From Adineta vaga (lineage: Eukaryota > Animalia > Rotifera): 64,000 nucleotides of DNA. The translations under genes were made by a program, and so were the position numbers. Positions 5,941 to 29,006 of this stretch are shown here, piece after piece; position 1 is the stretch's first letter; each line of letters opens with the position of its first letter. Where the stretch lies: assembly GCA_021613535.1 (NCBI GenBank), contig CP075494.1:12462001-12526000 (forward strand), read 5' to 3'. The notes beneath the pieces are model-generated. The model searched no databases, was not told the DNA's origin, and saw only the letters and a program-made list of their open reading frames with translations.

Positions 5941-6818
5941 ATGGTTACACGTATTATTAAAATCGGAGGTGCATCTATCACAGATAAGAGTCAATTTGAA
6001 CAAGTTCGATTGTCAAATATTGATTTTATTGTTGATTTATTTAAAACAAATTATCAAAATTTAATTTTAATTCATGGAGCTGGATCATTTGGGTAAGAAA
6101 AACGAAAATTAATCAAATGAATTTTATTGAATAGTTTTATAGTCATCATCAAGCAAAACAATTTAAATTAAATGAAGGTTATCTTCCGACTGATGATTAT
6201 GAAAAATGTCGTTGGGGTGTTTGTGATACACGACGATCATTAGGTCGTTTACAACAATATCTTCTAGATGCTTTTCTACGTAATCAAATTCCAGTTGTTA
6301 CCGTTTCACCATTCAATTTTCTTCTTTCGGATAAATTTGAATTAATTGAAGAAAATTTTCAACATCTTTGTCAACATCTAGAACAACTTCTCTCATTTGG
6401 TTATGTTCCACTTTTACATGGTGATGTTTTATTAGATAAAACGAAACATTGGCGAATATTTAGTGGTGATGATTTATTATTAAAACTAGCGGAATATTTC
6501 AAACCACGACAATGTGTCTTTTTAACATCCGTACCTGGAATACTTCGATTGGATGGAAGTGTGATTGAAGAATTCTATATTGATGAAAATAAATTTGATG
6601 AAATGAATTCTCAATCAAAAACAATCGATGTAACAGGATCAATGCAGAATAAAGTCATGATTGCAAGTGATATTGTGAAGAAAATTGATGAATGTCAAGT
6701 ATTTATTTTACAAGGTGTAAGTGATGATTCAAGACAACTTCTATCTTCACACATAGACAATGAACATCTCGTTTTAAATGGTTGTACACGAGTTTTAAAA
6801 AGAAAGACATCCATATGA
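5941..6818 (+). CDS. IPK: Isopentenyl phosphate kinase (amino-acid-kinase family), 2 exons
   Basis: ATG at 5941, intron 6093-6142; motifs IKIGGASITDK, IHGAGSFGH (IPK signature His), PLLHGDV, FSGDD, DVTGSMQNK. The ORF track shows only the C-terminal 89 aa. Confidence 0.88.
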
Positions 6819-8442
6819 TAAATAAATACAAAATAATCATTCTAATGTATTTGAAAGTGATCATCTGGACAATGAAAGTAAACTATTGTTAAATAGCACG
6901 CTTTCATTCTCATTATGTTATATGAGACGATGGCGGCATCAGTTTATTAAAAGTTCATCTATAATTCATATACTAATCATTTTGTTCTCATTGTTATTTA
7001 ATCGAAGAAATGATTGAAATCTATTCGTATTATATTTCCAATGAAAGAATTCTTGTCATTTGACAAGTCACATACGACACGATGAGAATGTCCGACGAAG
7101 AAGAAGAAGAAGAAGAAAAAAAGTGTTATTTATTACAAAAAACAAAGAATTCAATAATGTTTTGTCATATTCTGTTATGAATATTTACACCGTTCATTTT
7201 CACATAGTGACTCTTGATTGAATCGCGCGCATCGTTTTTTTTTCTATTACATACTTCATATAATTACAATCTAAATTCAGTTCAAATAAAAAAAAAGTGG
7301 AGAGCTCGATTTGAGTTCTTTTCATCTCGCATCTCTCTTAACTTTTACATCTCTATGTATGTATAAATACACACGAACAAGTTGTACGAATATTGACAGA
7401 ATTCAATTGAATTGAACATCGAGTCAAGTCTGCACTTGATCGAATGCTTTGATATAACAAATTTTCAATTTAATGGTATGTTGATATTGTCTGTATGTTC
7501 TTGTTCTTTATAATTTGTTCTCTTTTTTTTCTGTATATCTATTAGAATGTAGTCTCTAGTTTCAACAAAAGAAAAAGATTATAAAAAAAAATTTTCGAAG
7601 AACGAGAACATAAGAATTATTTGACCGTTTGATGGTACCGTAATACTTACTCTTTTCTTTTATTCTCTCCGCCTACCTAATGGATAATTGAAAAGAAAAG
7701 GAATCAGTAACAATGTCTTAGAGCTATTAGACACATATAGGTGTATATATATATACCTATATAGATCGATGTAAAAAAACAAACTTCATATTACTAAGTA
7801 CCAGTGCTTTTAAAGATAAAAAAAGTGATCATTTTTGACCAAAAAACTAGGAAGATGTCTTTTTCTTTCTTTGTTCTTGAATATAATCATCCAACTTGAA
7901 ACTGATCCATCTATGCTCGTGTCATTCCATTAAATTTGTCTTTGTCATTCTCATTTTGTTGATGTTAGAATGAATAATGGAATACACAATGAACTGACAA
8001 CACGTCAAATAATACCAACGACTATTCAATCATTGTATGCATACGTAAGTCTAATTGGTAGGATCATATGCATTCTCGTGCACATGTTTGTATTGAAACA
8101 TATCTAATCAAAGAGAAGTAACTGACTAATAGCCTAGAGTACAAACTAATAGCTCGGATAGTTTGAAGAAGAGAAAAAATCGAAAGATAATGATGATGAG
8201 AGTGTATGCATGCACACAAAAGCACGTTTCATTAATTCATTGTACCCTTGCGGCATATTGGATATTAACTAAAAGAGAAAACATCATCCACAATCGATTA
8301 CGTCGAAGGTCTTTTTTTCTTTTCATTCTTCGATTTCTTCTCATTATCTTTCTTATTAACAGTGATACTTTCATCGTCGTCATCTCAATATGAAACTAGA
8401 AAGATCTTGCGACAATCATTTGATTATCGAAAGATCAAAACA

Positions 8443-11273
8443 ATGTCAACGTATTTCCATGTAAGTTTCAATCTTTTATCAATGAAAATTTTTAATCAAT
8501 GTCTATCATTAGTATATTCAATCATCAATAAAATGTCAAATTGTTGTTCATGGTTAAATCGACAATATTGTTGTTGTCGACGGCAATCACGAGGCACATA
8601 TATCTATCTCTATAGTCCAACAATGGGTAGTTCATCATCATTATTTCATTGTCTTATTTGTATACTCTGTGGATTTTGTCTTGCATTTATTCTTATTTTA
8701 ACAACTATTATTATCTATAATATGAACAGTAAGAATCTATCATTAACATCAAAATCGCATACAAATCACGATATGCTACCTATTGCAAGAAAACGACAAT
8801 TACAAGATTTTGTTAATACTAACATTGATCCTTGTGAAAATTTTTATGATTTTGTGTGTGATAAATGGACTCAACAGAGAAAAAAAGAACGATCTTATGA
8901 TGGTGATGATACTAATGATGACGAAGATAGTTACAAACATAAATGGACACGTATTCGACATCGTATTCATGATAAACTAATGATTAATATGACTAAAGAT
9001 CAATCAAAATCAAATCAAAGTATGTAAATAGCAAATACTATTCAATCACTATCGTTTTTATTTCTCTTGAACATTTAGATAATATCTCATCAACAACTTC
9101 CTCTGTTTTAACATTGTATCAATTATGTGAAACTGAATCTCCTTCTTCATTACTTGATGAAGTTGAACGTTACTTTGCTCTTCTCATTCAACAAGAACCT
9201 TATCGATCATACTTAACTCTTTTTAACCAAACTACTTCAACTGATTCGATTTCTTCTGTACCACTTCATTTTCAATATAATCCATTCTTTAAATTAATCC
9301 ATTCAGCATCAAATCATTCATTTACAACAATTCTTCGATTTCATCGTCGATCATTACCATCACCTTTACTCATACTTCCTAATTTGAATGTTTTAAATCA
9401 AACAGCACTTGCTAATCTAATCAAATTTGATAAAGATTATACCAAATTTTTACAAGATGCCAATGATACGATTAAATTCTATGAACAAGAATATAATCAA
9501 AATTCTCTTATAGTCAAACGAATATTAGTCTATCCTGATTATCATATATGTCTTTCATCATTGAATGAAACAAATGGTTTTAGAAAATTAATAGAATTAT
9601 TAAATCATTTTCTTCAAACTCGTTTACGTAAATTTAATACTCGAATAGTTGATAAACAAATTCGTATTCTTGACAAAATTACAAATAATCATACATTAAT
9701 TGAACATCTTCGACGTATTCGATTAGAATTTAAAGTTCTCGAACAAATTTTACCTTTTGAAGATCAATCAATCAGTGATAATTCTTCATGTATTATCCAT
9801 TTACTCGATCAATTACTTGATAAACGTATGAAAATTTCCGATTTATCAATAAATCTGAATTTCTATTCGGATAATACAACATTAGAATATTACATGTCAA
9901 ATGATTGGCCTTATATAATGATGTTGCATGATCGGTTGTTGAAAACTACATTCAAAGATACACTTGTTAATTTCATTTTTTTCGATTATTATCGACATTT
10001 AATTTATCCTTATTATCAACCACATATTCATCGTTCGATTGATTTTAATCTGAATTTGAAAATTGAATCTTCTAGTTTATCCTATGGCACACCGAGTTCC
10101 AATCTCTCATGTCAAATTAATAATTGTTTCGATATTTTAAATTGTTATCATTCATCTTTACTTATTCAAACATTAGTTGATCGAAAACAGGTAATAAAAA
10201 TTAAACGAATAGCTTACAGTGCATTTTAGCATCATATGATTAATCAATGATCGACAGAGAGGAAGAAAAACAGAACAGAAAGGGGTGTGTCATTTGATAC
10301 ACATAGAGAGAAGAATGTAGACTCAAAAATTGGCAACATTTGTTCTTTTTTTTCTTCAGTTACAAGGTTTTATTGAGTAGAAGTTAATTTGTTTGCTAAT
10401 CAAATTCCACATAATATATAGAAGGAAAAAAAAACGTAACATATTACTCTAGTCAAATGAAAACGTACTTTGCATACAAGTTTTTAAATTCAATATTTAA
10501 CAGGAATGTTCTCGAAAGACAAAACTTAATTGAATTCGATTCTTTTCTATATTTAGATTTCACTTGATTCAATACAGATTATTGTTGAAAATTTAATCAA
10601 TCGTTTTCGTTTGATTATCGAACAATCAGATAATCTGTATACAGAAGAAAAAAATCTTTTAATAAATCAATTAAATCAAATTAAAATTATCATTGGTCAT
10701 CCATTTTCATCTCTATTAACTTTACCTTATCTTCATTCATCATCCTATCTCGATTATGTACAATTATTTGCTACAATTTCATCTGATCAACAAGATCACC
10801 AGTATTCAACCGAACCAATTTATAATCCCAACGATCATACATTAATTCTTCCCTATGGATTTATTTATCTCTCAAATCATTCAATTGAATATCCATTAGT
10901 CAAATTTCTTTTAAAAATTCTTTCGGAAACAATTCAATCAAATCCATTTTATATTGAATGTTTAATTAAATCTTTTGATGATTCAAATTCAACACTAATG
11001 GATACAAATGATGAACATATAACCTATCTTCTATTTCGTACTTCATTTCTATATGAACATAATATTATTTTTGATGAATATTTATGGCCATTTATAAGTA
11101 CAAATTCTTTAATAAAACGTTTTCTTATTGATTATACAGCAAATAATTATTGTCAAAATACTAATACTTATCGATTATTTCTTAATAATACTTATTTATA
11201 TGATGATATTTCTTTAGTATTTCATTGTCCTCAAGCAAGTTCTATTAAACAATCGAAATGTAGTGTTATTTAA
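8443..11273 (+). CDS. Divergent neprilysin/M13 peptidase-like type II membrane protein lacking HExxH
   Basis: TM anchor followed by DPCENFYDFVCDKW (M13 N-terminal motif), KIIIGHP, YNPNDHTLILPYG and C-terminal FHCPQ...KCSVI; introns ~8461-8512, ~9020-9078, 10191-10557. Confidence 0.75.
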
Positions 11274-12245
11274 ATTTGTCTGTTCATTTTTCTTTTATTT
11301 TATGTACAACAAAACAGAAACAAAAATCTTTACATTATTTACATTTATATCTTTAACAATAAAGTTCATTTGTATTCGTTAGTGTTCGTATTGAAATTGT
11401 ATAATCGAATTTTTCTATAATGTGCTATTAGAATTAATTCTACCGATGTTGAGCAGTATACCATCGTATCACAGATCAATTGATTTAATGTACTAAAAAC
11501 CATTCTAAGAGATTGATAATATGTTCAAGTCGTCGTATCTTTTGTTGAAGTTGTGATTAAACAAAAACCATCGTTTACTGTTGGAGATGTTGTTGGAGAT
11601 GATAAATCCTGTATAGAGACGATTTCATCGAAGGCTCGAGCATGAATACCAGGATTGTATGTAATTGAAACAAAGTTTCGTGAATGAAATGCCATAATTA
11701 GATTACGTTGAAAGAATAAATTTATAAAATATTTTAACATTCTCTTGTAATATACACTATATGTATTCTTACGATTTTTTTCTAGTATGATAGCTTTGTT
11801 ATGAGTATTTATACCTCGTTGTTATTGTGCACGTAACGCACTTTTATTCTGTTACTTGCGAACGAGTTGAAGGAAAGAAAAAAATGTTTCGTACTCGGTT
11901 ACATGCTCTTTCCTGCACTCTACGATCAAATCATATACTGTTCTCCTAGAGCGTCTATCGTGTTAGCTGTCATGTGTTACCCTATTCTATTCTTTCGAAA
12001 ACAGAAAGCACATATGTTGCACTAAAAAAATACGTAACTTCTCTTTACATTATTTCCTTTTCTTTTTCTGTATAATAAGAAAAGACAACCAATGCTATTT
12101 ACCAGATAACCTTGCGTTTCGTATGAGATATTTTTCTTTATTAGGATGATAAGCCTGTATCAAAACAAACGAACGACAACAAAGACAGAAAAAGAAGAGA
12201 AACAACACTCAATGGTATGAAACAGTTCATTTTTAGATTATATGT

Positions 12246-13675
12246 TTAAATGAGGTCAGCAACATTCATTGGCATTTCATCAATTTGTGTTGCATAATAT
12301 TGTTCAATATCTCGTAAGATACGGATATCATCATTCTTTACAAAATCTATAAGAAAAAGAAAAGAAATAGAGAATAAATTAATAGTATGGATTTATTCAA
12401 CTTACTGATAGCAACACCTTTACGACCAAATCGACCAGAACGACCAATACGATGAATATACAATTCACGAGAATTTGGAAGATCGTAATTAATAACCAAA
12501 CTAACTTGTTGTACATCGATACCTAGATGAACAACAAACGATGCAATTTTTATAGAGGAAAATTTAATTCTTAATATTACCTCGAGCCCAAACATCTGTC
12601 GTAATCAATACACGTGTGTCACCAGCACGAAATTCTTTCATAATAGCATCACGTTCTTCCTGTTTCATATCACCATGCATAGATGAAACAGTAAAATTAG
12701 CTTCACGCATCTTTTCAGTTAACCAAGTAACTTTACGTTTTGTATTACAGAAAATAACGGCTTGTGTAATCGTTAATGTATCATAGAGATCACATAATGT
12801 GTCGAATTTCCATTCTTCACGTTCAACAGCAACGAAGAATTGTTTGATGCCTTCAAGAGTCAATTCATCACGTTTAACTAAGATACGAATTGGATCAGTC
12901 ATAAATTTTGTGGTTATTTCCAAGATTTCATGTGGTAAGGTGGCTGAAACAAGGACAACTTGTGTTTGAGGTGGTAAATGACGATAGACTTCATAGATTT
13001 GTTCTTTGAAACCAAGATTAAGCATTTCATCGGCTTCATCCAACACTAACATTTTAATGTGACGAGTTCCTGAAATAAACAACAAAATTATAGTCATTGT
13101 TCAAATTCAATTATAGAACTTAAACTTCTTTAGAAAAATAAATGATACATACGTAAAGATCCTCGATTGATCATATCAGTGACTCTTCCTGGTGTACCAC
13201 TGACAATATGTTGTCCATAATCAAGTTTACGCATATCTTCTCCTGTACTAGTACCACCAATACAAGCGTGACATTGTACATTCATAAAATCACCAATAGC
13301 TAAAACGACTTTTTGAATTTGTGTTGCTAATTCTCTTGTTGGCGATAAAACTAATGCTTGCGTTTCGCGAATATTAGTATCTAATTTTTGTAACATTGAA
13401 ATTGAAAATGTTGCTGTTTTACCAGTACCCGATTGTGCTTGAGCAATAACATCACGTCCTTTAATAATTGGACGAATACTACGTTGTTGAATTGCTGATG
13501 GTTTTTCAAACCCATACGAATAAATACCACGAAGTAGATTTTCATTTAAATTCATTTGATCAAATGTTGGACATACTTCAACATCTTCACTTGTTTCAAA
13601 ATCAACGGCTTCAATATCATGACCTGTTTTGACAGTACGTTGACGTTTAGCTGGACGTTCAGGAATTGCTGACAT
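12246..13675 (-). CDS. EIF4A3: Eukaryotic initiation factor 4A-III (EJC DEAD-box helicase), 4 exons
   Basis: [21 protein letters not shown] and [10 protein letters not shown] motifs; eIF4AIII-type [22 protein letters not shown] and TDVWARG; C-terminus [11 protein letters not shown]. Confidence 0.97.
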
Positions 13676-14508
13676 ATTGAATTTGTAATTCACAAGCACA
13701 CGTTTAGCAACAAGTATGTGAATGACGAAATAATGAAACTGATAAACAAACAGGAACAATATTTTCCTATTGGTTGATCACGTAAACAAAGGACAAATAA
13801 AAATATTGTTATCAGACGAATAAATTTCTAGGAGAAATTATTTCATTCGTTTTCATTTTTTATGATTATTTTTTCATTAATTTGATTGTAATAAAAATGC
13901 CATCTACTTTTCTACAATTGATTGATAGAGACGACCAATAGTATTAAAGATAGATGTCGCATCCGTTGAATTTTGTTAGAACATTATTTCAACATCAGAT
14001 TCAACCGATGAAATTAACAATGATCGTTTTAAACTAAACTAGTAAGAGAGTGAACTTTTTCTAATCATGGATATTGAATTGTTTTAAGATAACGAGTACA
14101 TTTGTATATACATTACAAAAATCCAATTATAAAATGATTTGCTGATAAAAAGTGTTTATTAGTACAGCGAAAGGATGATTTATTATTATCGAGATAGTTA
14201 CTAATGTAGTATGTATTAGAAATTTTCACAATTGAGAAAGAGTAGATTAGTATTAGTAGAGATATTTCATTCACTCTGAGTTGTATCGACATTTTCAACG
14301 ATTAAGTAAACTATGGTTAAATGTAGAATATTTTTGTCCTAATTGTTTAAAACTATCATTCAACATTTATCTTTTCTAGATGTATATCAGCCATGGTGAT
14401 GTAATTGCATAACAATATTCCTAACACAAATAAGGTAGCGTTCTTTTTTTTGCACAAATAATGTTGTTTGTAGAAATCTCAAATTCATTGCTTATTTGTT
14501 TTTGCAGA

Positions 14509-15830
14509 ATGTCAACAGCAACCGAAATTGCAAATCATTCGTGTCCTATCGATGATTTATCTCGATCTCCAATTGATTCGTTAGGTAAATATCATTCAAG
14601 ATACAATACTGAACTGTCATCATGTTCTTCACCATCGGATTCATCCTCTTCTCTATTAATGGATTCTTCCAATGCTCAAGCATCAGCTTCATCGAATCAT
14701 TCAAAAGAAGCAACTGCCAAAATTCCGTATCCAATATTATCCGATCATCGTGATCCAACATTGATACTGACTCTTCTACAAAAAGAAACTCAAACAACAT
14801 CAAAAAAGATTCTTGAAGTTACTCAATTAGTTGAAACTTATGAGAAAAAATTGTCATCAAATCATGTTCCAGATAAAGATCGAAAATCGTTAAAATTCGA
14901 ATGTATTCGACGTAAACAACAATTAGATGCTTTGAAAAAACATGAACGTCGAGTTAATTTACAGATTGATTATATAACAATGAAAACGGAAATCAGATGT
15001 TTAGAAGATAAACGATTATTAATCAATGATGATAATAATTCAACGGAAAAGAAACAAATTGAAACTTTAGAAAGAAAATTAAAACAAAAATTAGAACAAA
15101 TGAAAATTTATATGAGAAAACGAAATGAAGAAATGAAAAAACTTCTCAATGAGAAACAAAAATCATCATCATCATGTACGAGGAAATAGATCAGAAAATA
15201 TGAATATAATTTCATAAGTTTTTGTTCTTATAGCTGATGGTAACCGTAGACAATCGACATCCGATCAAAAGACACAACAACAAACAACTTCATCCGATTT
15301 AGTAATTTCTCCTTTTCTCGAAATAGTCTCATGGAACTATTTGTAATCATATCATTTTAGAATCGAAAACGATCTTTGCCTGTAACTAAAGCCTCCCATT
15401 CAAACAAACATTTCAAATCAACAACATCTAATCATTCAAAACAGGCCATTGTTCGTCTAGCATCACGTCTATCAAATCATCAAACAAAATCTCAACCCAT
15501 GCAAACGCCAACAGTTCGATTTTTGAAAAAAACAACCGATTCAACAATTAATAATGGAAATTCTGTTTCTCCAACGACACCTGCATCATCGTCTTCAACA
15601 TTATCTCCGCCATTAATTGCCACGACAAGTACTGGTGATGATGCTACTAATACTTCAAAATCTTTACAACGGGTAAACTATTGAATATTTTAATCGATCA
15701 TTGAATTTAAAAATTTCATTTTCCTTAGAATACAAACCATTCTGTTGAAGACGACGGTGAACCTGATCTTGAATTTGATGTGGATGAATTATTCATTGAT
15801 GATTCACATTTAGCAGACTCTGACAAATGA
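14509..15830 (+). CDS. Uncharacterised coiled-coil, Ser/Thr-rich protein with acidic C-terminus, multi-exon
   Basis: ORFs 14461-15189 and 15376-15684 joined by short GT-AG introns; last exon encodes EDDGEPDLEFDVDELFIDDSHLADSDK*. Confidence 0.65.
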
Positions 15831-16134
15831 GAAATATCTAATATATGAGTGTAACAAGTCAATTTGAATATATTCTAAAAGCAGAATCTTTGAAGAAAAA
15901 GAAACTGTATATAAACGTTTATTTGTTTTTTTTGTATATGTCTTCAAATCTCGTTCTGTTCGTGCCCGGTCTTCGTTTGCTTTTTTTTATAATCTTGTCA
16001 TGATGCTTACATTGTTTCTACATTCGTTTTTTTTCTCTCTCCTTCTGTCACTTGTAGTTATAAGAGAAGTAACAACATAACAGACTTATTTTCTTTCTTC
16101 GTTTCTTTTCTAGATTTTTCAGATAGAAAACATT

Positions 16135-18515
16135 ATGGCCGACCCATCAGCAGCACCCGCGAAAAAGGCAGCACGAGTTTTTGATTTAGATGCTATGGTG
16201 GCACAAGCACGATCCGGTGCACAAGAACGATCAAACGTCGATTGGACAAATGAAATCGAGAGGACAAAAGAAGAAAATGAATTACGAATTTCCGAAATGA
16301 AATTAAAAGCAGATCAAGCAGCAAAACAAATGCAGAAAACCACTACTACTACTAATACGACAAATGATGATAATGATGATGATGATGATGATGATTTTGG
16401 CCCATCCATTTCTCTAGCTACAGCATCAGCTGCTAATAATGAAGATGAAAGTAGTGAAGACGACGATGATACTAATAATATTCCATCAGAGGTACGCAAA
16501 ATGATTCAACAATCGATATTATCATTTCCTTCGTTTGTATTTTAGTCGACTGGTCAAGATTCTGAACGATTAGATGATGATGAACAACCATTTTTTCCTG
16601 TAACACATGAAATTGATCTTAAACATGGAACAAAAACAGTATCCTGTTTAACTCTGGATACTAATGGAGAACGTTTAATATCCGGTGGTTTTGATTATGA
16701 ACTTAAAATGTGGGATTTTCCTGTCATGAATAAATCTTTACAATATGCTCGAGCAATATCTCCATGTGAATCTCATCAACTACGTTCAATTGAATATAGT
16801 CCTGCAAGTGATATGTTAGTTATTGCCAGTGGAAGTTGTCAAGGGAAAGTTATTACTCGAGATGGTAAACGAACACAAAAAAGTTTTGTTTCTAAACTAA
16901 TTCTTTTCTATTTTTTAGGAAAAAATATGTATGAATGCGTTCGAGGTGATATGTATCTAATTGATATGCAAAAAACCAAAGGTCATGTTGCTACATTAAA
17001 TCGTGCATGTTGGAATCCCAAAGATTTTAATGTAAGTAAATTTTTCATAGGCATATTTTCTTGTGAAACTGATCTTCTTCCAATAGGAATTTATGACTTG
17101 TTCCGATGATGGTACTGTTCGTCTTTGGTCTTTAGTTCGTCGTACAGAACATGTAACATGCATAAAAACAAAATCTGATCAAGGCAAAAAAACTGCTGCA
17201 ACAACATGTACATATAATACGTATCATACTCATGTTAGTCAAAATGAATATTTAATCACTGCTGGATGTGATGATGGTAGTATACAAATTTGGGATCGTC
17301 GTCGACCATTTGTTAATGTGACATTTATGGGTCGACGTGCACATGAAGCTGGAAATTCCATCACATCACTACGTTGGTCATACGATGGACGAAGTTTAGC
17401 ATCACGTTCAACTGATCATACACTTAAATTATGGGATATACGAAAATTTAAAGAACCACTTTCGGAATACGCCGATTTACATAATCGATTTTCTATGACT
17501 GATGTAACATTCTCACCCGATGATCGATTTCTAATCACAGGTACATCAACACGAAAGAAATCAGATGTTAATGAAAAAGATCCAACAAATGTTGGAGCTA
17601 TTTACTTTTTCAATCGAAATAATCTTGCTCAACCGGAAGGACAAATTCAAGTGAGTGAAAATGCAAGTGTTATTAAAACATTATGGCATTCTAAATTAAA
17701 TCAAATTATGTGTACAACGAGCAATGGCATTGTTAAAGTATTCTACGATCCAATCTGTTCGAAACAAGGTGCATTATTATTTGCTAATCGAGAAGAACGA
17801 CAGAAGAAAGCAAATGATTACTTTATTAACATGAATATTATCAATCCACATGCTTTACCAATGTATCGACAAGAAAGAGTTCGAAATCTATCTGTTATAC
17901 GAACAAAGAATCGACAAGATCCAGTACGTAAAATTTTCTGTATGTTTTTTAGAGATACCTCGATGAGAATCTTGACGACGTCGTTTTTCCTCGAGTGCGT
18001 ATCAGTCATTAAGTTAAATAATTAGTCTTTCATAGTTGTTATCGAAAAAAATTTCATTGCAGAGATCGTTTCTCATTATATTGACGTCATTAAGACATCA
18101 TTATTATTTAATCGACGCAACTTCGACATACTTGAAGGAGTCATGTGAAAAGGATATTTATATAAGTAGATAAATAAAATACGTTCCTCTCTTTTTTTAG
18201 GTAAAATCGAAACGTCCGGATTTGCCAATCAGTGGCGCTGGTTCCGGAGGTCGTATCGGTGTGCATGGTGGTACATTATCGTCATATATTGTCAAGAATA
18301 TTGCTCTACAAAAACCACCAGCACAAAAAGAAGATTCACGTGCTATTTTACTTAGTTACCAAGAAAAATGTGAAGAAGAACCATTTTGGGTGGCACCTGC
18401 TTATAAACTTAATCAACCTAAAGCAATTTTTCAAGAATCAACTGAAGATTTACAACAGAAAAAGAACGACGACGATGATAATATGGGACCACTTTGGAAA
18501 AAACAAAAAACATAA
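16135..18515 (+). CDS. WDR70: WD repeat-containing protein 70 (GAD-1 homologue), 5 exons
   Basis: Acidic N-terminus with DDFGP, then HEIDLKHGTK, RGDMYLIDMQKTKGH, IINPHALPMY and GSGGRIG, all typical of WDR70. Confidence 0.93.
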
Positions 18516-19065
18516 TTTGTTTGTCATTTATGTTTTGTAATATGTTTAAATTTATATGTATAAAAAGAAACTGCTATAAATCGGATGAAAAATGAGAATA
18601 TCTATTTCACATTTTGCGGTAATGACTCGAGGATATTATAGAAAAGTAGGTAGACTGTTTTTTTTAAATAGTTTCGGTTGTTTCATATCGTTTATGTTTT
18701 ACTCTGGCTCATTAGCTTAATATGGACTGAACGTTTCCGGTTTTGCGAAACCGATTCTTTTTCTCAATAGACATAATGAGACAAGACAAAAAGAAACAAA
18801 AAAGTACTCGTTGTATTATTTCTATTTGAAAACTATCAGCTCCTAACAAATCAAAAGAATATTGACTTAAATAGGAAAAAACGACATTTCTTACTAAACA
18901 TCTTAAACACAAACGAGTTATATTTCTAGTTAGTTACATTAATTGGATCCTTCTTCAAGTATCTTCTATTCGTATGCATATATATATATATATATTATAA
19001 ATAGACAATGCATTTTAAAAGTAGTATATAATCTTTGTTGATCGTTCATAATAAGTCTTTTCTAA

Positions 19066-19737
19066 ATGACATCGGCAACATCATCTCGTCGTGTATCAAA
19101 TTTACAATCTATTATAGAAAATTCTTCGAATCCCAATGATGAAGAAACAAATGATCAGACATTATCGAACAGTTGTCCAACCGAAGATTATCGTTATTCT
19201 TTACAATGGTCAACACCAAATCAAGTGACAAAAACAACTCGTGCTCATTCATGTTATGAAGAACGAGCTCCACCACAAACGACAAATGATCGATTTAAAC
19301 ATTTATGTACACGATTAAAACGTCGATTTAGTATATCGAAAGAATGTCGAACACGTAGTGAAGATATGAATCGTGGTTTAACAAAACGTTGTAAGAATTA
19401 TAAATCATTTTCTTCATCATTAGATGAAACATATAATGATTTTGAATGGCCAGATTTCGAACAGATTTATGATACAATTCCAACATGTCTTGCTAATGCT
19501 TTACCTGGCCTTGATGATCTTTCATTGAATGAATCAAGTGATGAAAGTGAAGAAATATTAAATTATCCTCCCGCTGAAAGTATTGAACAATTGAAATTAT
19601 TTGACGGATGTAAACGAGGAATATCTTACCGACGAAATGCTATTTGTCGAAAACTTGATAAAAGTTTATATAAAGGACAACTGAATACATTTATTCAACA
19701 ATTAATGATTGAAAAACTAATGAGAACATGGACATAA
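19066..19737 (+). CDS. Hypothetical orphan protein, single exon, 223 aa
   Basis: Clean ORF with coding-like codon use; TATAAA upstream (~18997) and AATAAA downstream (~19818). Confidence 0.65.
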   Translation: MTSATSSRRVSNLQSIIENSSNPNDEETNDQTLSNSCPTEDYRYSLQWSTPNQVTKTTRAHSCYEERAPPQTTNDRFKHLCTRLKRRFSISKECRTRSEDMNRGLTKRCKNYKSFSSSLDETYNDFEWPDFEQIYDTIPTCLANALPGLDDLSLNESSDESEEILNYPPAESIEQLKLFDGCKRGISYRRNAICRKLDKSLYKGQLNTFIQQLMIEKLMRTWT

Positions 19738-20135
19738 TCCAAGAATCGATTTTTTCTTTCTTCTTCTCCTTTTATTTGTAGTTATACAAATCGAATTCTA
19801 TGTATATGTATATATCAAATAAAGTATAAAAAAACACACGCATCAATATACTTCTAAATGGCGTTTTTGTCTTGAATTTAAGTACACATAGATCTGAAGA
19901 TTACTTTAGCACGTACACAACTACTGACAGACGGAATTACTAACGTTCTTTTTTCATTCATGAAAATAATTTCTTGAGAAAAAAAACGTAACATCAATAA
20001 AGCTCAAGAGAGCAATCCTTTTTTTTCTCATTAAATAATGTTTATTTCAGTTTACTGACTTCATCATAATCTAATCTAAATTTATATTCAGATATAAAAA
20101 ACAAGTACAATACTAAATAATATATATATATATAT

Positions 20136-21640
20136 CTACTTAGCTTGAATATCTCTATATAAAAGATAATTAATTAAATATTGTGAAATAGCTAAATGTA
20201 CAATGTCCTTTTGTTTTATGCTCAATTGACTATTGATAAGATACCGACAACAACTTTTTAATGAGCGTGGTTGAAATTTTGAAAATATTGACCAAAGATG
20301 TACTTGACCAGTACGTGTACCTACAGCCATTGTTTTTCCATCAGGTATAGTTGCAACACAAAGAGCATTATTTTGTGTTTGTTGATAGATTGATTCTGTT
20401 CGACGTGTTGATTCGATAGGAAACCAACGAATACAACTATGATGAAAATTTATAAATCTGTTGAGAGACGATGAAAAATATTTTTCTTACTTATCATCAC
20501 ATGTGCTAATCAGATATTGATCAAATTTGGTAAAAACAATAGATCGAACAAATGAACCATTCTCTCCTCCTGCATAGATTTTCAATGGTTTAGGAATTTT
20601 ATGAAGAAATTCTTTTAAAAGTTCGCCAGTTATTGTTGACCAAAGTAAAATTCGTGTATCAAAAGAAGCAGTTGCTAAAAGAGCACTTCAAAAAAGAAAG
20701 CGATGATAACGATAATATAGTTCCTAAATAAATTTTACCTGTCGGATGAAAAGGCGCAATCGACAACATTATGTAAATGTCCATCGAATTTGTATATCTC
20801 TTCCCATGTAGTTGTATCATAGAGTACAACTAATTCATGTGGACCTACTGCACACAAAAGTTTCTCATTTGGTGACCATTTAACAGTATTAATCACATGC
20901 GTCCAATTATCTAATGTTTTATACATATTACCTAAGTGAAAACACAAACTTCAAAGATTAAAAGTCTTAGGATTTCGAGATCGTTTACCATCATCCAGTA
21001 GATCCCATAATTTAATTGTTGTATCATGTGAACATGATGCTAATTGCATAGTACATGATGTAAATGCTAGGCCACATACAGTTGATTGATGATCAGCTAG
21101 AGTCAAAGTTAATTCTCGTGTATCAACATTCCAAATATTGATCTTTCCATCAGCTAAACCAGCTGCTAAAAATAGATTTTTAGTAAAATCAAAACGATGA
21201 TTGACAGATAAAGTAGAACGTCGTCGACCAAGTAATTCTCGACGTGTTAATGGCACTGAGAAACAATTTTCATTGAATAAATCTGATCTTATGGTTCGTT
21301 GACCGAATGCTAAGGACCAAACCGGTGATGAACAAGAGAATTCTTCATGAACATATAATTCATCTGTTTTATTCGTTGCATGCCAATTTGAACAATAGAT
21401 AAGAACAATACAATCTCCACCATAGATAGTTTGTTTCGGAATAGCTAAATAATGTGAACATGGCGAAAATGTTGTTTTCCAGACATTGTTCGGTAAAAAC
21501 GTTGATGATAATAAATAGTTTTGTAATGATTGATTTAACGGTAATGGGTTAGATGTTACTATTAGATAGAAATAAAAAGGAACAAGTTCTATTCAATAAA
21601 ATTAACTATGATAATTAATACCTAATGTGTGAGTAGTCAT
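20136..21640 (-). CDS. WSB1: WD repeat and SOCS box-containing protein, 5 exons
   Basis: WD40 repeats (LAAGLADGKINIWN, LASCSHDTTIKLWDL, GHLHNVVDCAFS), PLKIYAGGENG and C-terminal SOCS box PRSLKSCCRYLI. Confidence 0.9.
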
Positions 21641-23048
21641 AAATAGAATAAATCGTTAATTAATCATCTACAACTAAATATGTTTAGACATAATTTCGTA
21701 TGAAGTGACACGAATTTTTGTTTATTACGCAGGATGTTTAAAGTTTATAAATATCCTTTCATCTTATATACTATTCCTATTGCATTCTTTAATACTCAAC
21801 GTTTCTTTACATGCACACTTAAGATATGAAGTAGGTATAAATATACACCTTATCACTGACGTCGTATATAAATCTATTTTTAGATTTCATTCTACATTCA
21901 ACAGGAAACATTTACATCTAGCATTTTTATTGAAAAAAAAAATGAGTATATCTCTTTTATTTTATTTAAATAGTTACACAAGAAAATGATTATCTATAGT
22001 GTTTGAAGTACGAAAAAGAACAATGGTTCACAGACTATACTGATCTCACGTATGAAAAAAGTCGAATATTATGTTAGAAATATTGTGAATTTTTTGTACT
22101 AAACAATAGTTAATAACTACGTATTAAAAATCATGCAATCGAAAGAAAACATTGGGTGCTCAGTGTTCTGAAACAGAAGAAATGAAACCAAACCGATTGT
22201 ACTATATATGTCTGAAGTCAAGGTTGCCCTTGAACTATTCTTTAATCAATGTCATATTAAACCTTACAAAATGTTTATAAAGCAAAAAATAGTTTTCATA
22301 AATTTCTACTTGATTTCAAAATTATAAGTATCCAAAACATTGATTGAATGCTATAAGGAAATATAACAGATATGAAATCAAGCAAAAAATTAGAAGACTT
22401 TTCGAAAAAGAAGATACAATTATTCCTGAAAAATCAACTTACATAGTATTTTGTGATTTTTTATCTAAAATAATTGCTTCTCATACATGAAAGTTCTGAT
22501 AATCATACAATACAATATGAATAGAAGCAGCTCTTGTGAACATCAGAGATAACAATTGAACTACATGTATTATTATACGTTGTAAATATGAACCAATCAA
22601 ATTTTTATAGATAATGTTCTCTCCACTCGATGACATTAACATCTTCAATATACTAACAGAATAGTAAATCAGAGTTCCGATACTTCTAAACGAAAACAAT
22701 CTTACTATATTTTTGTTTCATAATCGTAATCAAAAACGATTGCTGCAGCTCAATACTAGTATGACTATTATTTATCAATACAAATTTGTAATATATATAT
22801 ATTATTCAAGATAATTTAAATGTAATCAAAATGATTATTGCGTCTCGTTTTGATACTATAGATTTGGAATCTTGTAAATGTTGACATCTACTAATATCAT
22901 TGTTTTTGTTCTGTAACGAGAAGAAACACTTTCACTATTGACACATTTCTTATGACATCAAAGATAAGATATCGAAACAATTTTATATCTTTTATTTGCT
23001 GTAAAGACACTTAGAGATCGTTTTAATTTCATACATCTAACTACAAAA

Positions 23049-23603
23049 ATGTCTTCAACCTATGGTAACCTTTTATGCATTATTGTCATCATACTTGCCG
23101 GTATCACTATACAAATACGTGATACTCCTCCATTGAATACTTATATATCTAAGAATATTTCTGCTACAAAATCATATGCAACATTTAATGAGTTCTATCC
23201 ATTTTATCTTAGTGAACATACTCAAAAAACAACTCGACAATGTCATTACATAGGCACAACTCTATTTCTTCTCTATCTTTTAACAAAACCGATTCTTTCC
23301 ATTCCACTTCTTGCTGGTGGTCTAGCTGCTTATGCTATCATTCCATTTTCTCGGCATTTATCAACTGGTTTATCTGAAGTAGTGATATTTCTAAGCATTT
23401 ATTTCATTAGTGGAAAACTTCTAACACGTTCATTTATTAAAACATCAATACCACTCTTGCTCGGCTACGGGTTTTCTTGGATTGGTCATTTCGGCTTTGA
23501 ACATAATAAACCAGCTGCATTCATCTATCCAACTTATAGTTTCTTCGGTGATATTCATATGATGTACGATGCAATCAAAGAACAACTTTCTTTAAATTTA
23601 TAA
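23049..23603 (+). CDS. DUF962/Mpo1-family membrane protein, intronless
   Basis: FNEFYPFYLSEH...CHYIGT and GYGFSWIGHFGFEHNKPA motifs with the three conserved His residues. Confidence 0.85.
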   Translation: MSSTYGNLLCIIVIILAGITIQIRDTPPLNTYISKNISATKSYATFNEFYPFYLSEHTQKTTRQCHYIGTTLFLLYLLTKPILSIPLLAGGLAAYAIIPFSRHLSTGLSEVVIFLSIYFISGKLLTRSFIKTSIPLLLGYGFSWIGHFGFEHNKPAAFIYPTYSFFGDIHMMYDAIKEQLSLNL

Positions 23604-23781
23604 ATCTTACCCATCATATTCACATATATTTTTATCCTTATATCAATTAAAACAACTACAATCCAAATGAAAAACTGAAAACTAAATGTACGGAAAATTG
23701 AAAAAAAAAAAAGATTCAAAAAAGAAAATCCTAAGTACATGTACAATATCTTGATAGAGTTAGAAAGAAAAAGGCTTGTTT

Positions 23782-26700
23782 TTAACGCATTTGTTTCTTC
23801 TTGTAATCTTCTTTCAACGCTTGTTCTTTAAGATCAAGTTCTTCAAAATCAGATTTTAACCAATCAAGCATATCAGAAAAGATTACAACACCATTTGCTG
23901 ATGGATCTGATACACCTGGTAATGGTCGTTGAACACTTAACATTTCTGCTTCTTCATCATCATCATTTGTTGTACCATCTTCATTGACCATCATGTATTC
24001 TTCATATTCTAAAGAATTTGATGCATATTGTTGTTGATGAATTTTATAATGATTTTTCATTCGATAAGCTGAAGGTATATATTGTTTACAAATAGCACAA
24101 ATACGTCGTTTTAATTCTTTTCGAACACTTGAACAGCAATGATCGAATGGTAAAATATCATTTTGTGTAAACTGCATAACAATACCATGAAATTGAATAC
24201 GTTGTATTAATGAACCATAGAAAACACCTTTCTGATAATCACGATCGGCCATAGCAATACCACGTGGTGTACGTTCAAATGGAATGGGTGCAGGAAGAAA
24301 ACGATGAGGAAATACTTGAATATAATTCGAACGCCATGGTCCACAACATGAAATTGAATTGCAACGAATGATTTGAATTGTATATTGAGTTTGAAGAACA
24401 TGAGTTGCACACCAATATCTAAACAAAAAAGTTAATTTTAATTTCATTCAATTATAATTATTTAAAAACTTACTCATCAATATCATATTTTGCTGCATCT
24501 TTCATTAGTTCACCATCAGGTGTGAGACGTGGGGCACGAACTCGTTCTTGATAATATTCATCACTTTGTCGAATACGATGTTCAACTGGTTCGTTCTGTT
24601 CTTCTTCTTCACATATACTAGAAGTCATTTCAAATAGAAAGAAACATCAATCAAATGAAATTATCTTACCGATTTAACATATTACTCATTACAAGATTTA
24701 CATCAATTAAACGTAATTCTTCCGGTGTTGATGCTGGTGGATCAATATATTCAGCAACAACCGAATATTCATCAATTACTGAACCACACCAAACTTCTGC
24801 TAGAACTTCTCCAGCTTTTTTGAAATTAGTTCGTTCTAATTCGGGATTCACAGTAACACCTGAATCACTCAAATGTGTACCAAAATGATCATGAGGTAAA
24901 ATGAGACCAGCTAAATCGTGTGAAAGTGGTGCCATACGTCGTTCAACAACATTGTAAGCGGATTGACCTGGTGCATGTGTTAGAACAAATAAAGCATCGA
25001 GATTATATTTACGAAATTTTCGTATAGCAGCAACGAGTGTTTTAGGAAAACGTGGATTTTCATCTGGACCACCATCGACTGTAATGATTACAATGGGTTT
25101 TACTTGTCCGGTATAATCTCGAGCTGATTTTTCGAATTCTTTTAAACCAACTAACCGATCAAAATCACATGAATGACTATTTGCATCACTTCGATCATGT
25201 TTGGCTGAACGAATTGCAATATAAGTTGGACCTGAATAACCAACATCATTATGATCATTTATCATACATCCAGCATAAACACTAGAAATATCATCAATGA
25301 TGAATTATTTTCAAAAATATACGTATCAAATATCTTTACCTTGGTGTAAGTTGATGACGAGGTGCAACAGTCCAATCATGATCCGGTAAACGAACACGAT
25401 AATCCAAATGCATAAGCATAGGTGCTTGAATTTTAGCAGCCGGTAAACCAATCGGTACTTTACATTTATCATCTTGTGATAAGAAGAAAACAACATCATT
25501 ACCGAAAATACCGGCTAAATCTTTTATATAACGAATCGTTGCTGTTGCAAAATGACCATCTAAAAGAAAACGAATTTATTATTGATTATTTCTTCTAAAT
25601 AATTAAATCATTTATTATAACCTTCATGTTTGCCATGTTCGTCATTTAAAGCTTTTCGAAGACGTACAGGAACTGTACGAACATGTTTTTTTCCATCTAC
25701 TGAATTTGCACGATGTGGTAATAAACTAATAAATAAATAAAGAAAGAAAGAATATTATCAATGAATTAGTCTATAACACTTACCGATAGTAGAGTGTGGA
25801 TCGCTTGATATCATAGCCACGTTCTTTGATTTTTTCTCGTAAATCATCTAATGTTAAACAAGGTCGAACAGTTTGTGAACGTCGATTATCGTCAGCAGCA
25901 CCGCCAACTTTTGCAATTTCTTCTATAATTTGTAATAAATCTGGACATTCTTCTTCTATTGGTGGTCGACCAATGACTGGACGATAAATTTTATTTAATT
26001 CGGCAGCTAATTCAGGATTTTTTTCACACAATGCTTCGATTTTACGCTATAATAATAATAAATCTTCATACAATTTCCGAAGACAAAACAAAATAGAATC
26101 TTACTTTTTTAATTTCTCGATAGCGTTTTTTTGCTGCTTGTTCAGCTTTCAATCTTTTTAAATCGTTTGCTTTCTTCTTTTGTTCAACAAGAAGTTTTTT
26201 CAATTGTTTTTCTTGTTCATTCGTTGCCATACCCATATTTTTGACTTGAACTAATTGAATAATTCGTTCATTGATCTCATGAAGTTCTTTGGAAACTTTA
26301 TCTTGTGCTGGTGCTTTCGATTTTTTTGCCAGAATTTCAGCTGCTGTTCGAATCTTCTCTGTGGGTTTCGTTGTTGGTTCTTCTGGTTCAAATTCAGGAT
26401 CTGATGATGCTGCTCGTTTCCGTCGTTTTTTTGATACTCGTCCACCATTCTCTGCATCAATACCTGATTCACATTTTTTCTTTCGTCCACGAGTTTTCTT
26501 CTTTTTTGGTTCATAATCATCATCATTATTATCATCATCCCTTTCATTATTACCATCATCATCATCACCAACCGCATCATCTTGTTTATTATCATCACCT
26601 AAACCAGCTGCACTACTTGAATTGAATTTTTCTATGTATTCATCGATCTTTTCTTGAACATGTTTTTCATCACCTTTTATTTGATTCCATTCTACTTGAG

Positions 26701-26853
26701 CTTCAGCATGAGAGATCTGAAAGAAAAATTATGAGTATTTTCAATCGTTATTTTTTATCCTACTTTTCGAGGAACATTAGCATGTGCTTTCATATAAGCA
26801 TCAACAAATGTGCGGTACAAACAATAACGTGCTGTTGTTTTACGTGCAGGCAT
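23782..26853 (-). CDS. Zator-superfamily (TP36-related) DDE transposase-derived gene, 8 exons; probably domesticated
   Basis: Approximate exons 26853-26764, 26717-26105, 26047-25784, 25726-25622, 25559-25341, 25282-24671, 24617-24474, 24418-23782. Motifs SQDDKCKVPIG, LPDHDW, VDGGPDENPRF, HAPGQSAYNVVERRMAPLS and C-terminal C2H2 finger CAIC...HYKIH. Confidence 0.8.
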
Positions 26854-27284
26854 TGTGTGTAGACTGAACTTTGTAAAAGTAGTAAATGAACATGAGAAGA
26901 AAAAAAAGGACGTCGTTTACTATTTTTGACCGCTTCATGACCTCCTCCCCTAGATAAAACATGCACGTCCTGCTTTCCATCGTTTATTTTAACCAACGAA
27001 ATTTTGACCGACAGTATAAATATACGTCCTTTCTTTCTTTCTTTCTTTCTGTTCTTTCCTACGAACATTGAACATAAATCAACGAGAAATCGTGTACGAT
27101 TGACTGACGTCCGGGTCAGCTTGATGCAGAAGATATCTTTTCTCGTCCTTTACGAATGAGTTTTTTTGTTTTGTTGCTAGAATTTATTCTTGATTTCTTT
27201 TTTTCTTTTAGTAAAATAATAACATAAAGCATACACACTCACAAGAGAAGAAAGAAAGAAGGAAAAACGAGTGAAACAGTCTTT

Positions 27285-29006
<1,722 letters not shown>

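What the first reader, a model, noticed from the sequence alone, without database searches (positions are those of the whole stretch)
23782..26853. Intron-rich Zator-type transposase with intact DDE triad and no visible TIRs: candidate domesticated nuclease or recombinase
Seen: 8 exons with 7 host-sized introns and no stops or frameshifts found. The catalytic residues D (SQDDK), D (VDGG) and E (VERRM) are present, as are a C2H2 finger, an acidic tract and a basic NLS-like region. The gene sits 178 bp from the convergent DUF962 stop and ~430 bp from the PSMC6 stop, with no inverted termini visible. Established: Zator transposases are related to bacterial TP36 transposases and the mobile elements are bounded by TIRs. 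Inference: a host gene derived from a Zator element that may still cut DNA. I know of no characterised domesticated Zator gene.
Basis: partly seen in the sequence, partly recalled or inferred. Interest (0 to 1): 0.8.

Follow-up and report, generated by a model that had tools for sequence, protein, structure and literature searches.

The report
Domesticated Zator-like transposase gene in bdelloids
This is an intact, intron-bearing host gene that descends from a Zator/ISAzo13-type "cut-and-paste" transposase. It has sat next to the same proteasome gene since before the bdelloid rotifer genome duplication and still keeps its DNA-cutting residues, which makes it a good candidate for a host DNA-cleaving or DNA-binding enzyme whose function is not known.

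Summary
On the minus strand at 23782-26853 there is an 8-exon, 893-codon open gene with seven GT..AG introns of 47-62 bp. It has no terminal inverted repeats and no near-identical copies in its genome (Adineta vaga, chromosome 5).

- **Family:** It belongs to a large eukaryotic family with 1634 representatives. 16 of 44 diverse members match the bacterial ISAzo13 transposase model (best E 1.7e-11). One metagenomic relative, 54% identical in the catalytic exon, is a multi-copy 3-kb element with perfect 27-28-bp inverted ends.
- **Fixed position:** The order PSMC6, then the gene, then a convergent Mpo1/DUF962 gene is the same in Rotaria socialis. A. steineri also has PSMC6 upstream. A second copy lies at the matching place on the duplicate chromosome 2, and in Rotaria that second copy also follows PSMC6.
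- **Selection:** dN/dS is 0.13-0.18 overall and 0.04-0.07 in the catalytic core.
- **Active site:** The DDE triad is kept in all nine A. vaga paralogues and in 78 of 84 bdelloid sequences. In a confident model of the catalytic core it sits at the β1 / β4 / α4 positions expected for an RNase H fold.

Other first-stage notes flagged sister paralogues elsewhere in this genome. Catalytic activity and biological role remain inference.

The parts
26764..26853 (-). Exon 1 (ATG at 26853-26851). It encodes the start of a conserved N-terminal three-helix domain.
   Evidence: Helices 8-66 have pLDDT about 96 in the orthologue model.
26105..26716 (-). Exon 2: the rest of the N-terminal helical domain, an acidic tract (26581-26510), basic NLS-like tracts (26509-26414) and the start of a long coiled coil.
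   Evidence: This is one of the fastest-evolving parts (dN/dS 0.21-0.32 against the window gene, similar to exon 7).
25784..26046 (-). Exon 3: helix-turn-helix region (GRPPIEE...; 25971-25900).
   Evidence: Weak match to positions 53-123 of the ISAzo13 model (E 0.018). Relatives match the same model region at E about 1e-6.
25622..25725 (-). Exon 4: linker into the catalytic domain (GKRHV..VPVRL motif).
25340..25559 (-). Exon 5: strands β1-β3 of the RNase H-like core. The first catalytic Asp is at codon 25473-25471 (SQDDK).
   Evidence: Identity is 100% with the chromosome 2 copy and with A. steineri, and 98.6% with R. socialis.
24670..25281 (-). Exon 6: the rest of the catalytic core. The second Asp is at 25076-25074 (VDGG) and the Glu at 24944-24942 (VERRM).
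   Evidence: 54% identical (E 6e-69) to the transposase of an element with terminal inverted repeats. Weak ISAzo13 match to model positions 262-326.
24474..24617 (-). Exon 7: acidic, disordered linker and the least constrained part of the protein.
23782..24418 (-). Exon 8: Cys/His-rich module (24402-24343), a C2H2-type finger (24099-24037), an acidic tail, a conserved C-terminal helix and the stop codon at 23784-23782.
   Evidence: C2H2 Pfam models are hit weakly in up to 9 of 44 relatives.
26900..27160 (-). Conserved upstream (promoter / 5' UTR) module. It has five blocks with GGACG(T) cores at about 26912, 26970, 27029, 27112 and 27148, plus an AGGTCA..GGTCA block.
   Evidence: The blocks are conserved in A. 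steineri, R. socialis and the chromosome 2 copy, which lacks PSMC6. Three of the six GGACGTS sites in the 64-kb window lie here.
23049..23603 (+). Convergent downstream neighbour, an Mpo1-like (DUF962) gene. It marks conserved gene order and is not part of the gene itself.
   Evidence: Pfam PF06127, E 1.8e-26. The same neighbour is present in R. socialis.
27285..27611 (-). Last exon of the upstream neighbour, a PSMC6-type proteasome AAA ATPase. It marks conserved gene order.
   Evidence: AAA_lid_3, E 2.3e-14. A 403-aa proteasome AAA gene lies upstream of the orthologues in A. steineri and in both R. socialis copies.

Best explanation
The gene is a host gene recruited from a Zator-like (ISAzo13/TP36-related) DDE transposase.

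**Shown.** It lost its transposon ends and became fixed just downstream of PSMC6 before the ancient bdelloid genome duplication. Both duplicate copies have been kept in Adineta and Rotaria under strong purifying selection, with a conserved upstream control module. It belongs to a bdelloid-wide family of at least four groups of orthologues, with nine genes in A. vaga.

**Inferred.** The protein keeps the whole transposase layout: an N-terminal helical domain, a long coiled coil, a helix-turn-helix region, an RNase H-like DDE core and a Cys/His zinc module. It therefore most likely pairs through the coiled coil, binds specific DNA through the helix-turn-helix and zinc modules, and uses the intact D-D-E site to nick or cut DNA, or to join strands, at sites the host specifies. 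The process it serves is unknown.
For: - **Gene model:** intact 8-exon model. No terminal inverted repeats. No near-identical copies: the best other copy is 81% identical at the DNA level.
- **Family identity:** 1634 representatives at E<1e-3. 16 of 44 diverse members hit ISAzo13 NF033519 (best E 1.7e-11) and 2 hit PF07592. Relative P0260 lies in a 3.0-kb unit that is 99.8-100% identical on six contigs with different flanks and is bounded by 27-28-bp perfect inverted repeats. It is 54% identical to exon 6.
- **Orthologues:** 90% identical in A. ricciae and A. steineri and 84% in Rotaria (95%, 94% and about 90% in the core, respectively).
- **Gene order:** PSMC6, the gene, then convergent Mpo1-like in R. 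socialis, and PSMC6 upstream in A. steineri. The copy at C2:4.99 Mb lies beside the duplicate of the window's right-hand block. Chromosomes 2 and 5 are duplicate (homoeologous) chromosomes (PMC8494291). The second R. socialis copy also follows PSMC6 and shares its downstream gene with A. vaga C2.
- **Introns:** all 7 intron positions are shared with R. socialis and with the C2 copy, whereas the transposon relative has none.
- **Selection:** dN/dS is 0.13-0.18 overall and 0.04-0.07 for exons 3-6.
- **Active site and fold:** DDE is present in all 9 A. vaga paralogues and in 78 of 84 bdelloid sequences. In the AF2 model of the 90%-identical orthologue, D381 ends β1, D494 follows β4 and E538 starts a helix. 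The core superposes on Metnase/SETMAR (Z 9.0, 173 residues, 3.6 A), Mos1 (Z 8.8), RSV integrase (Z 9.3) and Sleeping Beauty (Z 7.9).
- **Other paralogues:** two more groups are also at conserved positions between Adineta and Rotaria.
Against: - No expression, binding or cleavage data could be consulted, so activity is inferred only from conservation and the model.
- The window's own exons, and the full-length orthologues P0169 and P0168, do not reach significance against ISAzo13 models. The superfamily link therefore runs through relatives.
- No Repbase Zator transposase was available for direct comparison.
- The VIA Z-scores of 8-9 are in the range that tool calls 'middling'.
- Conserved gene order could not be shown in Didymodactylos, where the contigs carry no neighbouring genes, nor for the fourth group of orthologues.
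- NG86 underestimates dS in this AT-rich genome, so the dN/dS ratios are approximate.
Confidence: 0.85

Rival explanations
1. The gene is domesticated but no longer catalytic. It would act as a sequence-specific DNA-binding regulator or chromatin protein, as CENP-B, POGZ or JRK do. The DDE residues would be kept only because they stabilise the fold or bind metal or DNA.
For: The helix-turn-helix region, coiled coil, zinc modules and NLS-like tracts are all conserved. The gene has a conserved promoter of its own. Many domesticated transposases are regulators (general knowledge; PMC7386202 for pogo-derived genes).
Against: Regulator-type domesticates usually lose the triad. Here D-D-E is kept in 78 of 84 bdelloid sequences across at least four old paralogue groups. 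The catalytic exons are also the most constrained part of the protein (dN/dS 0.04-0.07, against 0.2-0.3 for exon 2).
Confidence: 0.3
2. The gene is a fixed transposase source. It cannot move itself but still mobilises non-autonomous (MITE-like) elements of A. vaga in trans.
For: The full transposase architecture and the triad are intact. A. vaga carries dispersed MITE-like repeats, for example at window 44685-45355 with about 170-bp inverted ends and dozens of genomic matches.
Against: No sequence link between any such repeat and this family was found or tested. A source that does not replicate itself gains nothing from mobilising other elements, so selection at the transposon level cannot explain purifying selection at a fixed locus, with both duplicate copies kept, since before the genome duplication.
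Confidence: 0.08
3. The gene is still an autonomous transposon, or one immobilised only recently, whose terminal repeats are too short or too degenerate to see.
For: It encodes a complete transposase with an intact triad, and bdelloid transposon families are typically low in copy number (general knowledge).
Against: It has the same neighbours in two bdelloid families and on both duplicate chromosomes. Its intron positions are shared with Rotaria. No copy is more than 81% identical. dN/dS is about 0.05 in the core. There are no inverted termini. The flanking spacers are only 178 and 431 bp, and the longer one is filled by motifs conserved across genera.
Confidence: 0.02

Closest known systems
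Zator superfamily DNA transposons and their prokaryotic counterparts, the ISAzo13 (TP36, Pfam DDE_Tnp_ISAZ013) insertion sequences
   Same: It is a DDE transposase. Relatives match the ISAzo13 model in both the helix-turn-helix part (model positions 50-215) and the catalytic part (263-378). A close relative is a genuine 3-kb element with 27-28-bp terminal inverted repeats. The fold is closest to the IS630-Tc1-mariner group, as published for Zator (PMC7386202).
   Different: The window gene has no terminal repeats and no mobile copies. It has seven introns, fixed neighbours and its own conserved promoter. It is also much longer (893 aa against 387 model positions), with an N-terminal helical domain, a coiled coil and a C-terminal Cys/His module. 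Direct clustering with Repbase Zator sequences was not tested.
SETMAR/Metnase (primate gene derived from a mariner transposase)
   Same: Both are domesticated transposases from the wider Tc1/mariner-like group held at a fixed locus. SETMAR is among the best structural matches to the catalytic core (3k9j Z 9.0, 3f2k Z 8.5).
   Different: As far as I recall, SETMAR is a single, young, primate-only fusion with a SET domain whose third catalytic residue has changed (DDN). Here the triad is intact, the gene is old (it predates the genome duplication) and it has multiplied into a family.
RAG1, PGBD5 and the ciliate PiggyMac/Pgm-like genes (domesticated DDE transposases that still cut DNA)
   Same: In these, as here, the catalytic triad is kept under long-term host selection. 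PiggyMac, like this gene, comes with a set of paralogues.
   Different: They derive from different superfamilies (Transib, piggyBac). Their substrates and biological roles are known, whereas none is known here. As far as I recall, the PiggyMac-like paralogues have mostly lost the triad, while all nine A. vaga paralogues keep it.

Membership tests
Zator / ISAzo13-related DDE transposase superfamily | Sequence homology to bacterial ISAzo13 (TP36) transposases | tested here: met
   Met at family level. 16 of 44 diverse relatives hit NF033519 (best E 1.7e-11) and 2 hit PF07592 (8e-6). The matches cover both the helix-turn-helix and catalytic parts of the model in the expected order. The window's own exons are only weak (E 0.018 and 0.14). 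The link to relatives is firm (exon-6 profile; 54% identity, E 6e-69 to P0260).
Zator / ISAzo13-related DDE transposase superfamily | DDE triad on an RNase H-like fold | tested here: met
   D, D and E are nearly invariant (72/73, 70/73, 70/73). They lie at the end of β1, after β4 and at the start of a helix in the model. The core superposes on Mos1, SETMAR, Sleeping Beauty and integrases at Z 7.9-9.3.
Zator / ISAzo13-related DDE transposase superfamily | Element bounded by terminal inverted repeats | tested here: not met
   No credible inverted termini around the window gene. They are present in the metagenomic relative L047 (27-28 bp). Their absence is what a domesticated derivative should show.
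Zator / ISAzo13-related DDE transposase superfamily | Target-site duplication (3 bp, recalled from the original Zator description) | tested here: inconclusive
   There is nothing to test at the window, since it has no ends. The flanks of the metagenomic copies show no consistent duplication, possibly because assembly through repeats made the flanks chimeric.
Zator / ISAzo13-related DDE transposase superfamily | Clusters with reference (Repbase) Zator transposases in a tree | not testable with these tools
   No Repbase sequences are held here. The assignment rests on the published pairing of Zator with ISAzo13-like elements (PMC5718144).
Domesticated (host-recruited) transposase gene | Orthologues at the same chromosomal position in distant species | tested here: met
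   PSMC6, the gene, then convergent Mpo1-like in R. socialis; PSMC6 upstream in A. steineri. The second copy is also at a conserved position.
Domesticated (host-recruited) transposase gene | Loss of transposon ends and of mobile copies | tested here: met
   The nine paralogues are 50-89% identical in protein and lie in different, conserved contexts.
Domesticated (host-recruited) transposase gene | Intact reading frame under purifying selection | tested here: met
   dN/dS is 0.13-0.18 overall and 0.04-0.07 in the core, across A. vaga C5/C2, A. steineri and R. socialis. The frame is open in all of them.
Domesticated (host-recruited) transposase gene | Expression and a host function | not testable with these tools
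   No RNA-seq or functional data could be reached. The only indirect sign is the conserved upstream module.

The most novel reading that the evidence does not exclude
Bdelloid rotifers would carry a conserved family of catalytically active nucleases or recombinases derived from a Zator-like transposase: nine genes in A. vaga, all keeping the DDE triad, and older than the genome duplication. These enzymes would make or process programmed DNA breaks in a host pathway, for example the modified meiosis and recombination of these asexual animals, repair after desiccation, or uptake or control of foreign DNA. This would be the first domesticated Zator, and a multi-gene one.
Probability: 0.3. Interest if true: 0.85.

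Novelty: new member of a known kind. Interest (0 to 1): 0.66.

Why it matters
Domesticated transposases that still cut DNA (RAG1, PiggyMac, PGBD5, Kat1) underlie some of the most striking genome processes known. Full-text searches here found no described domesticated gene from the Zator superfamily. In this case the domesticate is not a single gene but a family found across bdelloids, with the active site kept in every A. vaga member. Bdelloids are notable for asexuality with recombination, extreme repair of double-strand breaks and massive uptake of foreign genes. That gives a concrete, testable set of candidate enzymes for processes in bdelloids whose machinery is still unknown.

Tried and rejected
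- **Family scans on the exons.** Pfam gave nothing, and NCBIfam gave only weak ISAzo13 hits in the expected order. Full-length orthologues P0169 and P0168 also missed ISAzo13. The link had to be made through more distant relatives.
- **PF07592 scan of the whole genome.** It hit only a different, distant locus on C1.
- **Foldseek on the 888-aa model.** No match below E 1e-3. The VIA re-alignment was needed to see the core fold.
- **C-terminal exon folded alone.** This gave a poor model (pLDDT 57), so no fold search was run on it. The fold of the Cys/His module stays untested.
- **Gene order in Didymodactylos carnosus.** The contigs carry no informative neighbours.
- **Gene order for the fourth paralogue group.** Only short upstream matches were found.
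- **Target-site duplication of the metagenomic element.** Inconsistent flanks.
- **Promoter as a relic transposon end.** The GGACGT-rich promoter does not resemble the inverted repeat of the element found, and no matching motifs lie 3' of the gene. This idea was rejected as unsupported.
- **Literature searches.** Nothing on Zator domestication or on this bdelloid family.
- **Handling of the spliced model.** No joined (spliced) protein was handed to any search or folding tool. Queries were exon-by-exon references, and annotated database orthologues served as full-length stand-ins. The spliced CDS was assembled only inside local scripts, to check the frame and to pool exon-wise alignments for dN/dS and the tree.
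Full report
**What is there.** The window is AT-rich eukaryotic DNA, about 30% G+C. It lies at C5:12462001-12526000 of a 100.8-Mb, six-chromosome assembly. The assembly is Adineta vaga, because the copy on the 16,274,841-bp chromosome 2 is the NCBI protein I4U23_007343 [Adineta vaga]. On the minus strand I rebuilt the gene from the open frames and splice signals. It has eight exons (26853-26764, 26716-26105, 26046-25784, 25725-25622, 25559-25340, 25281-24670, 24617-24474, 24418-23782) and seven GT..AG introns of 47-62 bp. It runs for 893 codons with no stop or frameshift. A search for inverted repeats across the gene and its flanks found only short or low-complexity pairs and no terminal repeats.

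**How the spliced model was handled.** All queries were exon-by-exon references. For steps that needed a full-length protein I used annotated database orthologues (for example A. ricciae P0169, 90% identical) as stand-ins. The spliced CDS was put together only inside local scripts. One script checked the reading frame. Others pooled exon-wise alignments for dN/dS and for the tree.

**What family it is.**
- Pfam finds nothing in the exons.
- NCBIfam gives two weak hits to the ISAzo13 transposase model, in the same order as the model: exon 3 to model positions 53-123 (E 0.018) and exon 6 to 262-326 (E 0.14).
- A profile of exon 6 from five A. vaga paralogues found 1634 cluster representatives at E<1e-3 among 1.8 billion proteins. 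They come from a springtail, hagfishes, a snail, insects, bdelloids and many unnamed metagenome contigs.
- Of 44 diverse, longer members, 16 hit ISAzo13 NF033519 (best E 1.7e-11) and 2 hit Pfam DDE_Tnp_ISAZ013. The hits cover both the helix-turn-helix and the catalytic parts of the model.
- ISAzo13-like elements are the published prokaryotic counterpart of the eukaryotic Zator superfamily (PMC5718144; PMC7386202).
- One relative, P0260, lies in a 3.0-kb unit that is 99.8-100% identical on six metagenome contigs with different flanks. The unit is bounded by perfect 27-28-bp inverted repeats and has no introns. This relative hits ISAzo13 at E 1.3e-6. It is 54% identical to the window's exon 6 (E 6e-69) and 31% identical to the Cys/His module of exon 8.

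So the gene clearly descends from the transposase of a real cut-and-paste element of the Zator/ISAzo13 kind. I could not compare it with Repbase Zator sequences.

**Fold and active site.** I made an AlphaFold2 model of orthologue P0169 using a 73-sequence alignment. Mean pLDDT is 74, and mostly above 85 across the core, residues 350-640. It shows the β1-β2-β3-α-β4-α-β5-α order of an RNase H-like domain. D381 ends β1, D494 follows β4 and E538 starts a helix. There are 112 residues between the two Asp and 43 between the second Asp and the Glu. Foldseek alone was weak. The VIA re-alignment places the core on:
- Metnase/SETMAR: Z 9.0, 173 residues, 3.6 A
- Mos1: Z 8.8
- RSV integrase: Z 9.3
- Sleeping Beauty: Z 7.9

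These Z values are moderate. They cover almost whole catalytic domains and agree with the sequence evidence. The model also shows:
- a confident N-terminal three-helix domain
- a disordered acidic/basic stretch
- a roughly 90-residue coiled coil
- helix-turn-helix segments
- a C-terminal Cys/His module packed on the core

Folded alone, the C-terminal exon gave a poor model, so I did not search with it.

**Mobile or fixed?**
- *Copy number.* The best other DNA match in the genome is 81% identical. Protein searches find eight further full-length paralogues at 50-89% identity, plus one distant ISAzo13-like locus.
- *The chromosome 2 copy.* The closest copy (C2:4.99 Mb) lies about 2 kb from the duplicate of the block that flanks the window gene on its right, in the same orientation. 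Chromosomes 2 and 5 are the duplicate (homoeologous) pair left by the ancient tetraploidy (PMC8494291). The left block, including Mpo1/DUF962, maps to C2:5.065-5.102 Mb in inverted orientation. One end of an inversion therefore falls in or next to the 178-bp spacer.
- *Other species.* Orthologues are 90% identical in A. ricciae and A. steineri and 84% in five Rotaria assemblies, rising to 90-95% in the core. In R. socialis the order is the same as in the window: a 403-aa proteasome AAA ATPase, then the gene, then a convergent Mpo1-like gene. A. steineri also has the ATPase upstream.
- *The second Rotaria copy.* The second R. socialis copy (P0163) also follows a PSMC6 gene, and it shares its downstream neighbour with A. 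vaga chromosome 2. The PSMC6-gene pairing is therefore older than the genome duplication, and A. vaga later lost the chromosome 2 PSMC6.
- *Introns.* All seven intron positions are shared with R. socialis and the chromosome 2 copy. A. steineri has lost introns 3 and 7.

**Selection.** Nei-Gojobori estimates on exon-wise codon alignments compared the window gene with the chromosome 2 copy, with A. steineri and with R. socialis. They give dN/dS of 0.13-0.18 overall and 0.04-0.07 for exons 3-6. Exon 2 gives 0.2-0.3, and the short exon-7 linker is the least constrained. dS is probably underestimated in this AT-rich genome, so the true ratios are likely lower, not higher. The triad is intact in all nine A. 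vaga paralogues and in 78 of 84 bdelloid sequences in the tree alignment.

**A family, not a lone gene.** I built a FastTree of 94 sequences on 606 columns. The A. vaga loci entered as exon pieces merged in alignment space. Apart from one partial D. carnosus sequence (P0244) whose placement is weakly supported (0.37), the bdelloid proteins form one clade against those of other animals (support 1.00). Inside it are at least four groups, each with Adineta and Rotaria members. The window's group contains both duplicate lineages and has the shortest branches. Two other groups are also at conserved positions between A. vaga and R. socialis. L035 and L053 share a DEAH helicase and a proteasome alpha subunit upstream. 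L037 and L054 share a DUF3431 gene downstream. This was not shown for the fourth group. Introns 3-5 are shared among three groups. The fourth group has lost several introns and gained two. Two other first-stage notes in this genome (s1-484759, s1-505421) describe 'domesticated Zator' candidates on other pieces. These are presumably some of the same paralogues, so the scan has met this family before on other DNA.

**Regulation.** The roughly 330 bp upstream of the ATG contains five or six blocks of 10-20 bp. They are conserved between the window, A. steineri, R. socialis and the chromosome 2 copy, which has no PSMC6, so the blocks belong to this gene. Most have a GGACG(T) core, and one holds AGGTCA..GGTCA. 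Three of the six GGACGTS sites in the 64-kb window lie within these 205 bp. The other paralogue groups lack the cluster. This looks like a dedicated host promoter. Which factor binds it is unknown.

**Mechanism.** Four things are shown: transposase ancestry, immobility, age and constraint. The rest is inferred. Because the whole transposase layout and the triad are conserved, and the catalytic exons are the most constrained, the protein most likely pairs through its coiled coil. It would bind specific DNA through its helix-turn-helix and zinc modules, and cleave or join DNA. The main rival is a non-catalytic DNA-binding regulator (about 0.3). A fixed transposase source for MITEs is possible but unsupported (about 0.08). 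A still-mobile element is effectively excluded (about 0.02).

**Novelty.** Domesticated DDE transposases are a well-known kind. Full-text searches found no report of one from Zator, and nothing on this bdelloid family. I rate it a new member of a known kind. It is made more interesting by the multi-gene family, the intact active sites and the biology of the host.

Noticed in passing
window 26900-27160: Upstream of the gene there is a cluster of conserved blocks with GGACG(T) cores, plus an AGGTCA..GGTCA pair that resembles nuclear-receptor half-sites. The blocks are conserved across Adineta, Rotaria and both duplicate copies, and are absent from the other paralogue groups.
   Followed up: partly
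window 23604-23781 (against C2:5064996 and C2:4994238): The window's left block (3600-23599, including Mpo1/DUF962) matches C2:5.065-5.102 Mb in inverted orientation. The gene and the right block match C2:4.994-5.019 Mb in direct orientation. An inversion of about 70 kb therefore has one end at or near the gene's 3' end.
   Followed up: partly
L042:5147-6016 (G000 C1:17823152-17823358): This is a separate, distant ISAzo13/Zator-like ORF: PF07592 at 27.9 bits, NF033519 at E 1.6e-6, and 31% identical to exon 6. It looks like a more classical Zator-type remnant or element in A. vaga.
   Followed up: partly
P0025 / P0152 (hagfish proteins found by the profile search): Homologues in Eptatretus burgeri and Myxine glutinosa are 93% identical over 710 aa, keep the DDE motifs and are annotated with several isoforms. 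This suggests a possible independent domestication of the same transposase family in hagfishes, animals known for programmed DNA elimination.
   Followed up: partly
L035 (G000 C5:12.385 Mb) and L053 (R. socialis): A second paralogue, only 100 kb from the window gene, also sits just downstream of a proteasome gene (an alpha subunit) in both A. vaga and R. socialis. Two family members each next to a proteasome subunit gene may be coincidence or shared regulation.
   Followed up: no
window 44685-45355: This is a MITE-like repeat of about 670 bp with roughly 170-bp inverted ends (130 nt at 94% plus 34 nt at 94%) whose termini start ACGTAG. It has dozens of matches on all six chromosomes in both orientations. 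Its superfamily is unknown, and no link to the transposase family was tested.
   Followed up: partly
L047:3044-6047 (ENA metagenome contig; also L048-L052): This is an apparently active, intron-less 3.0-kb Zator-like transposon with 27-28-bp perfect inverted repeats, present at 99.8-100% identity in several contexts. The host organism is unknown and no clear target-site duplication was seen.
   Followed up: partly
L043:11072-11076 and 12320-12324; L038-L041: Introns have turned over within the family. The A. steineri orthologue lacks introns 3 and 7. One paralogue group lacks the introns between exons 3-6 and has new ones inside the regions matching exons 6 and 8.
   Followed up: partly
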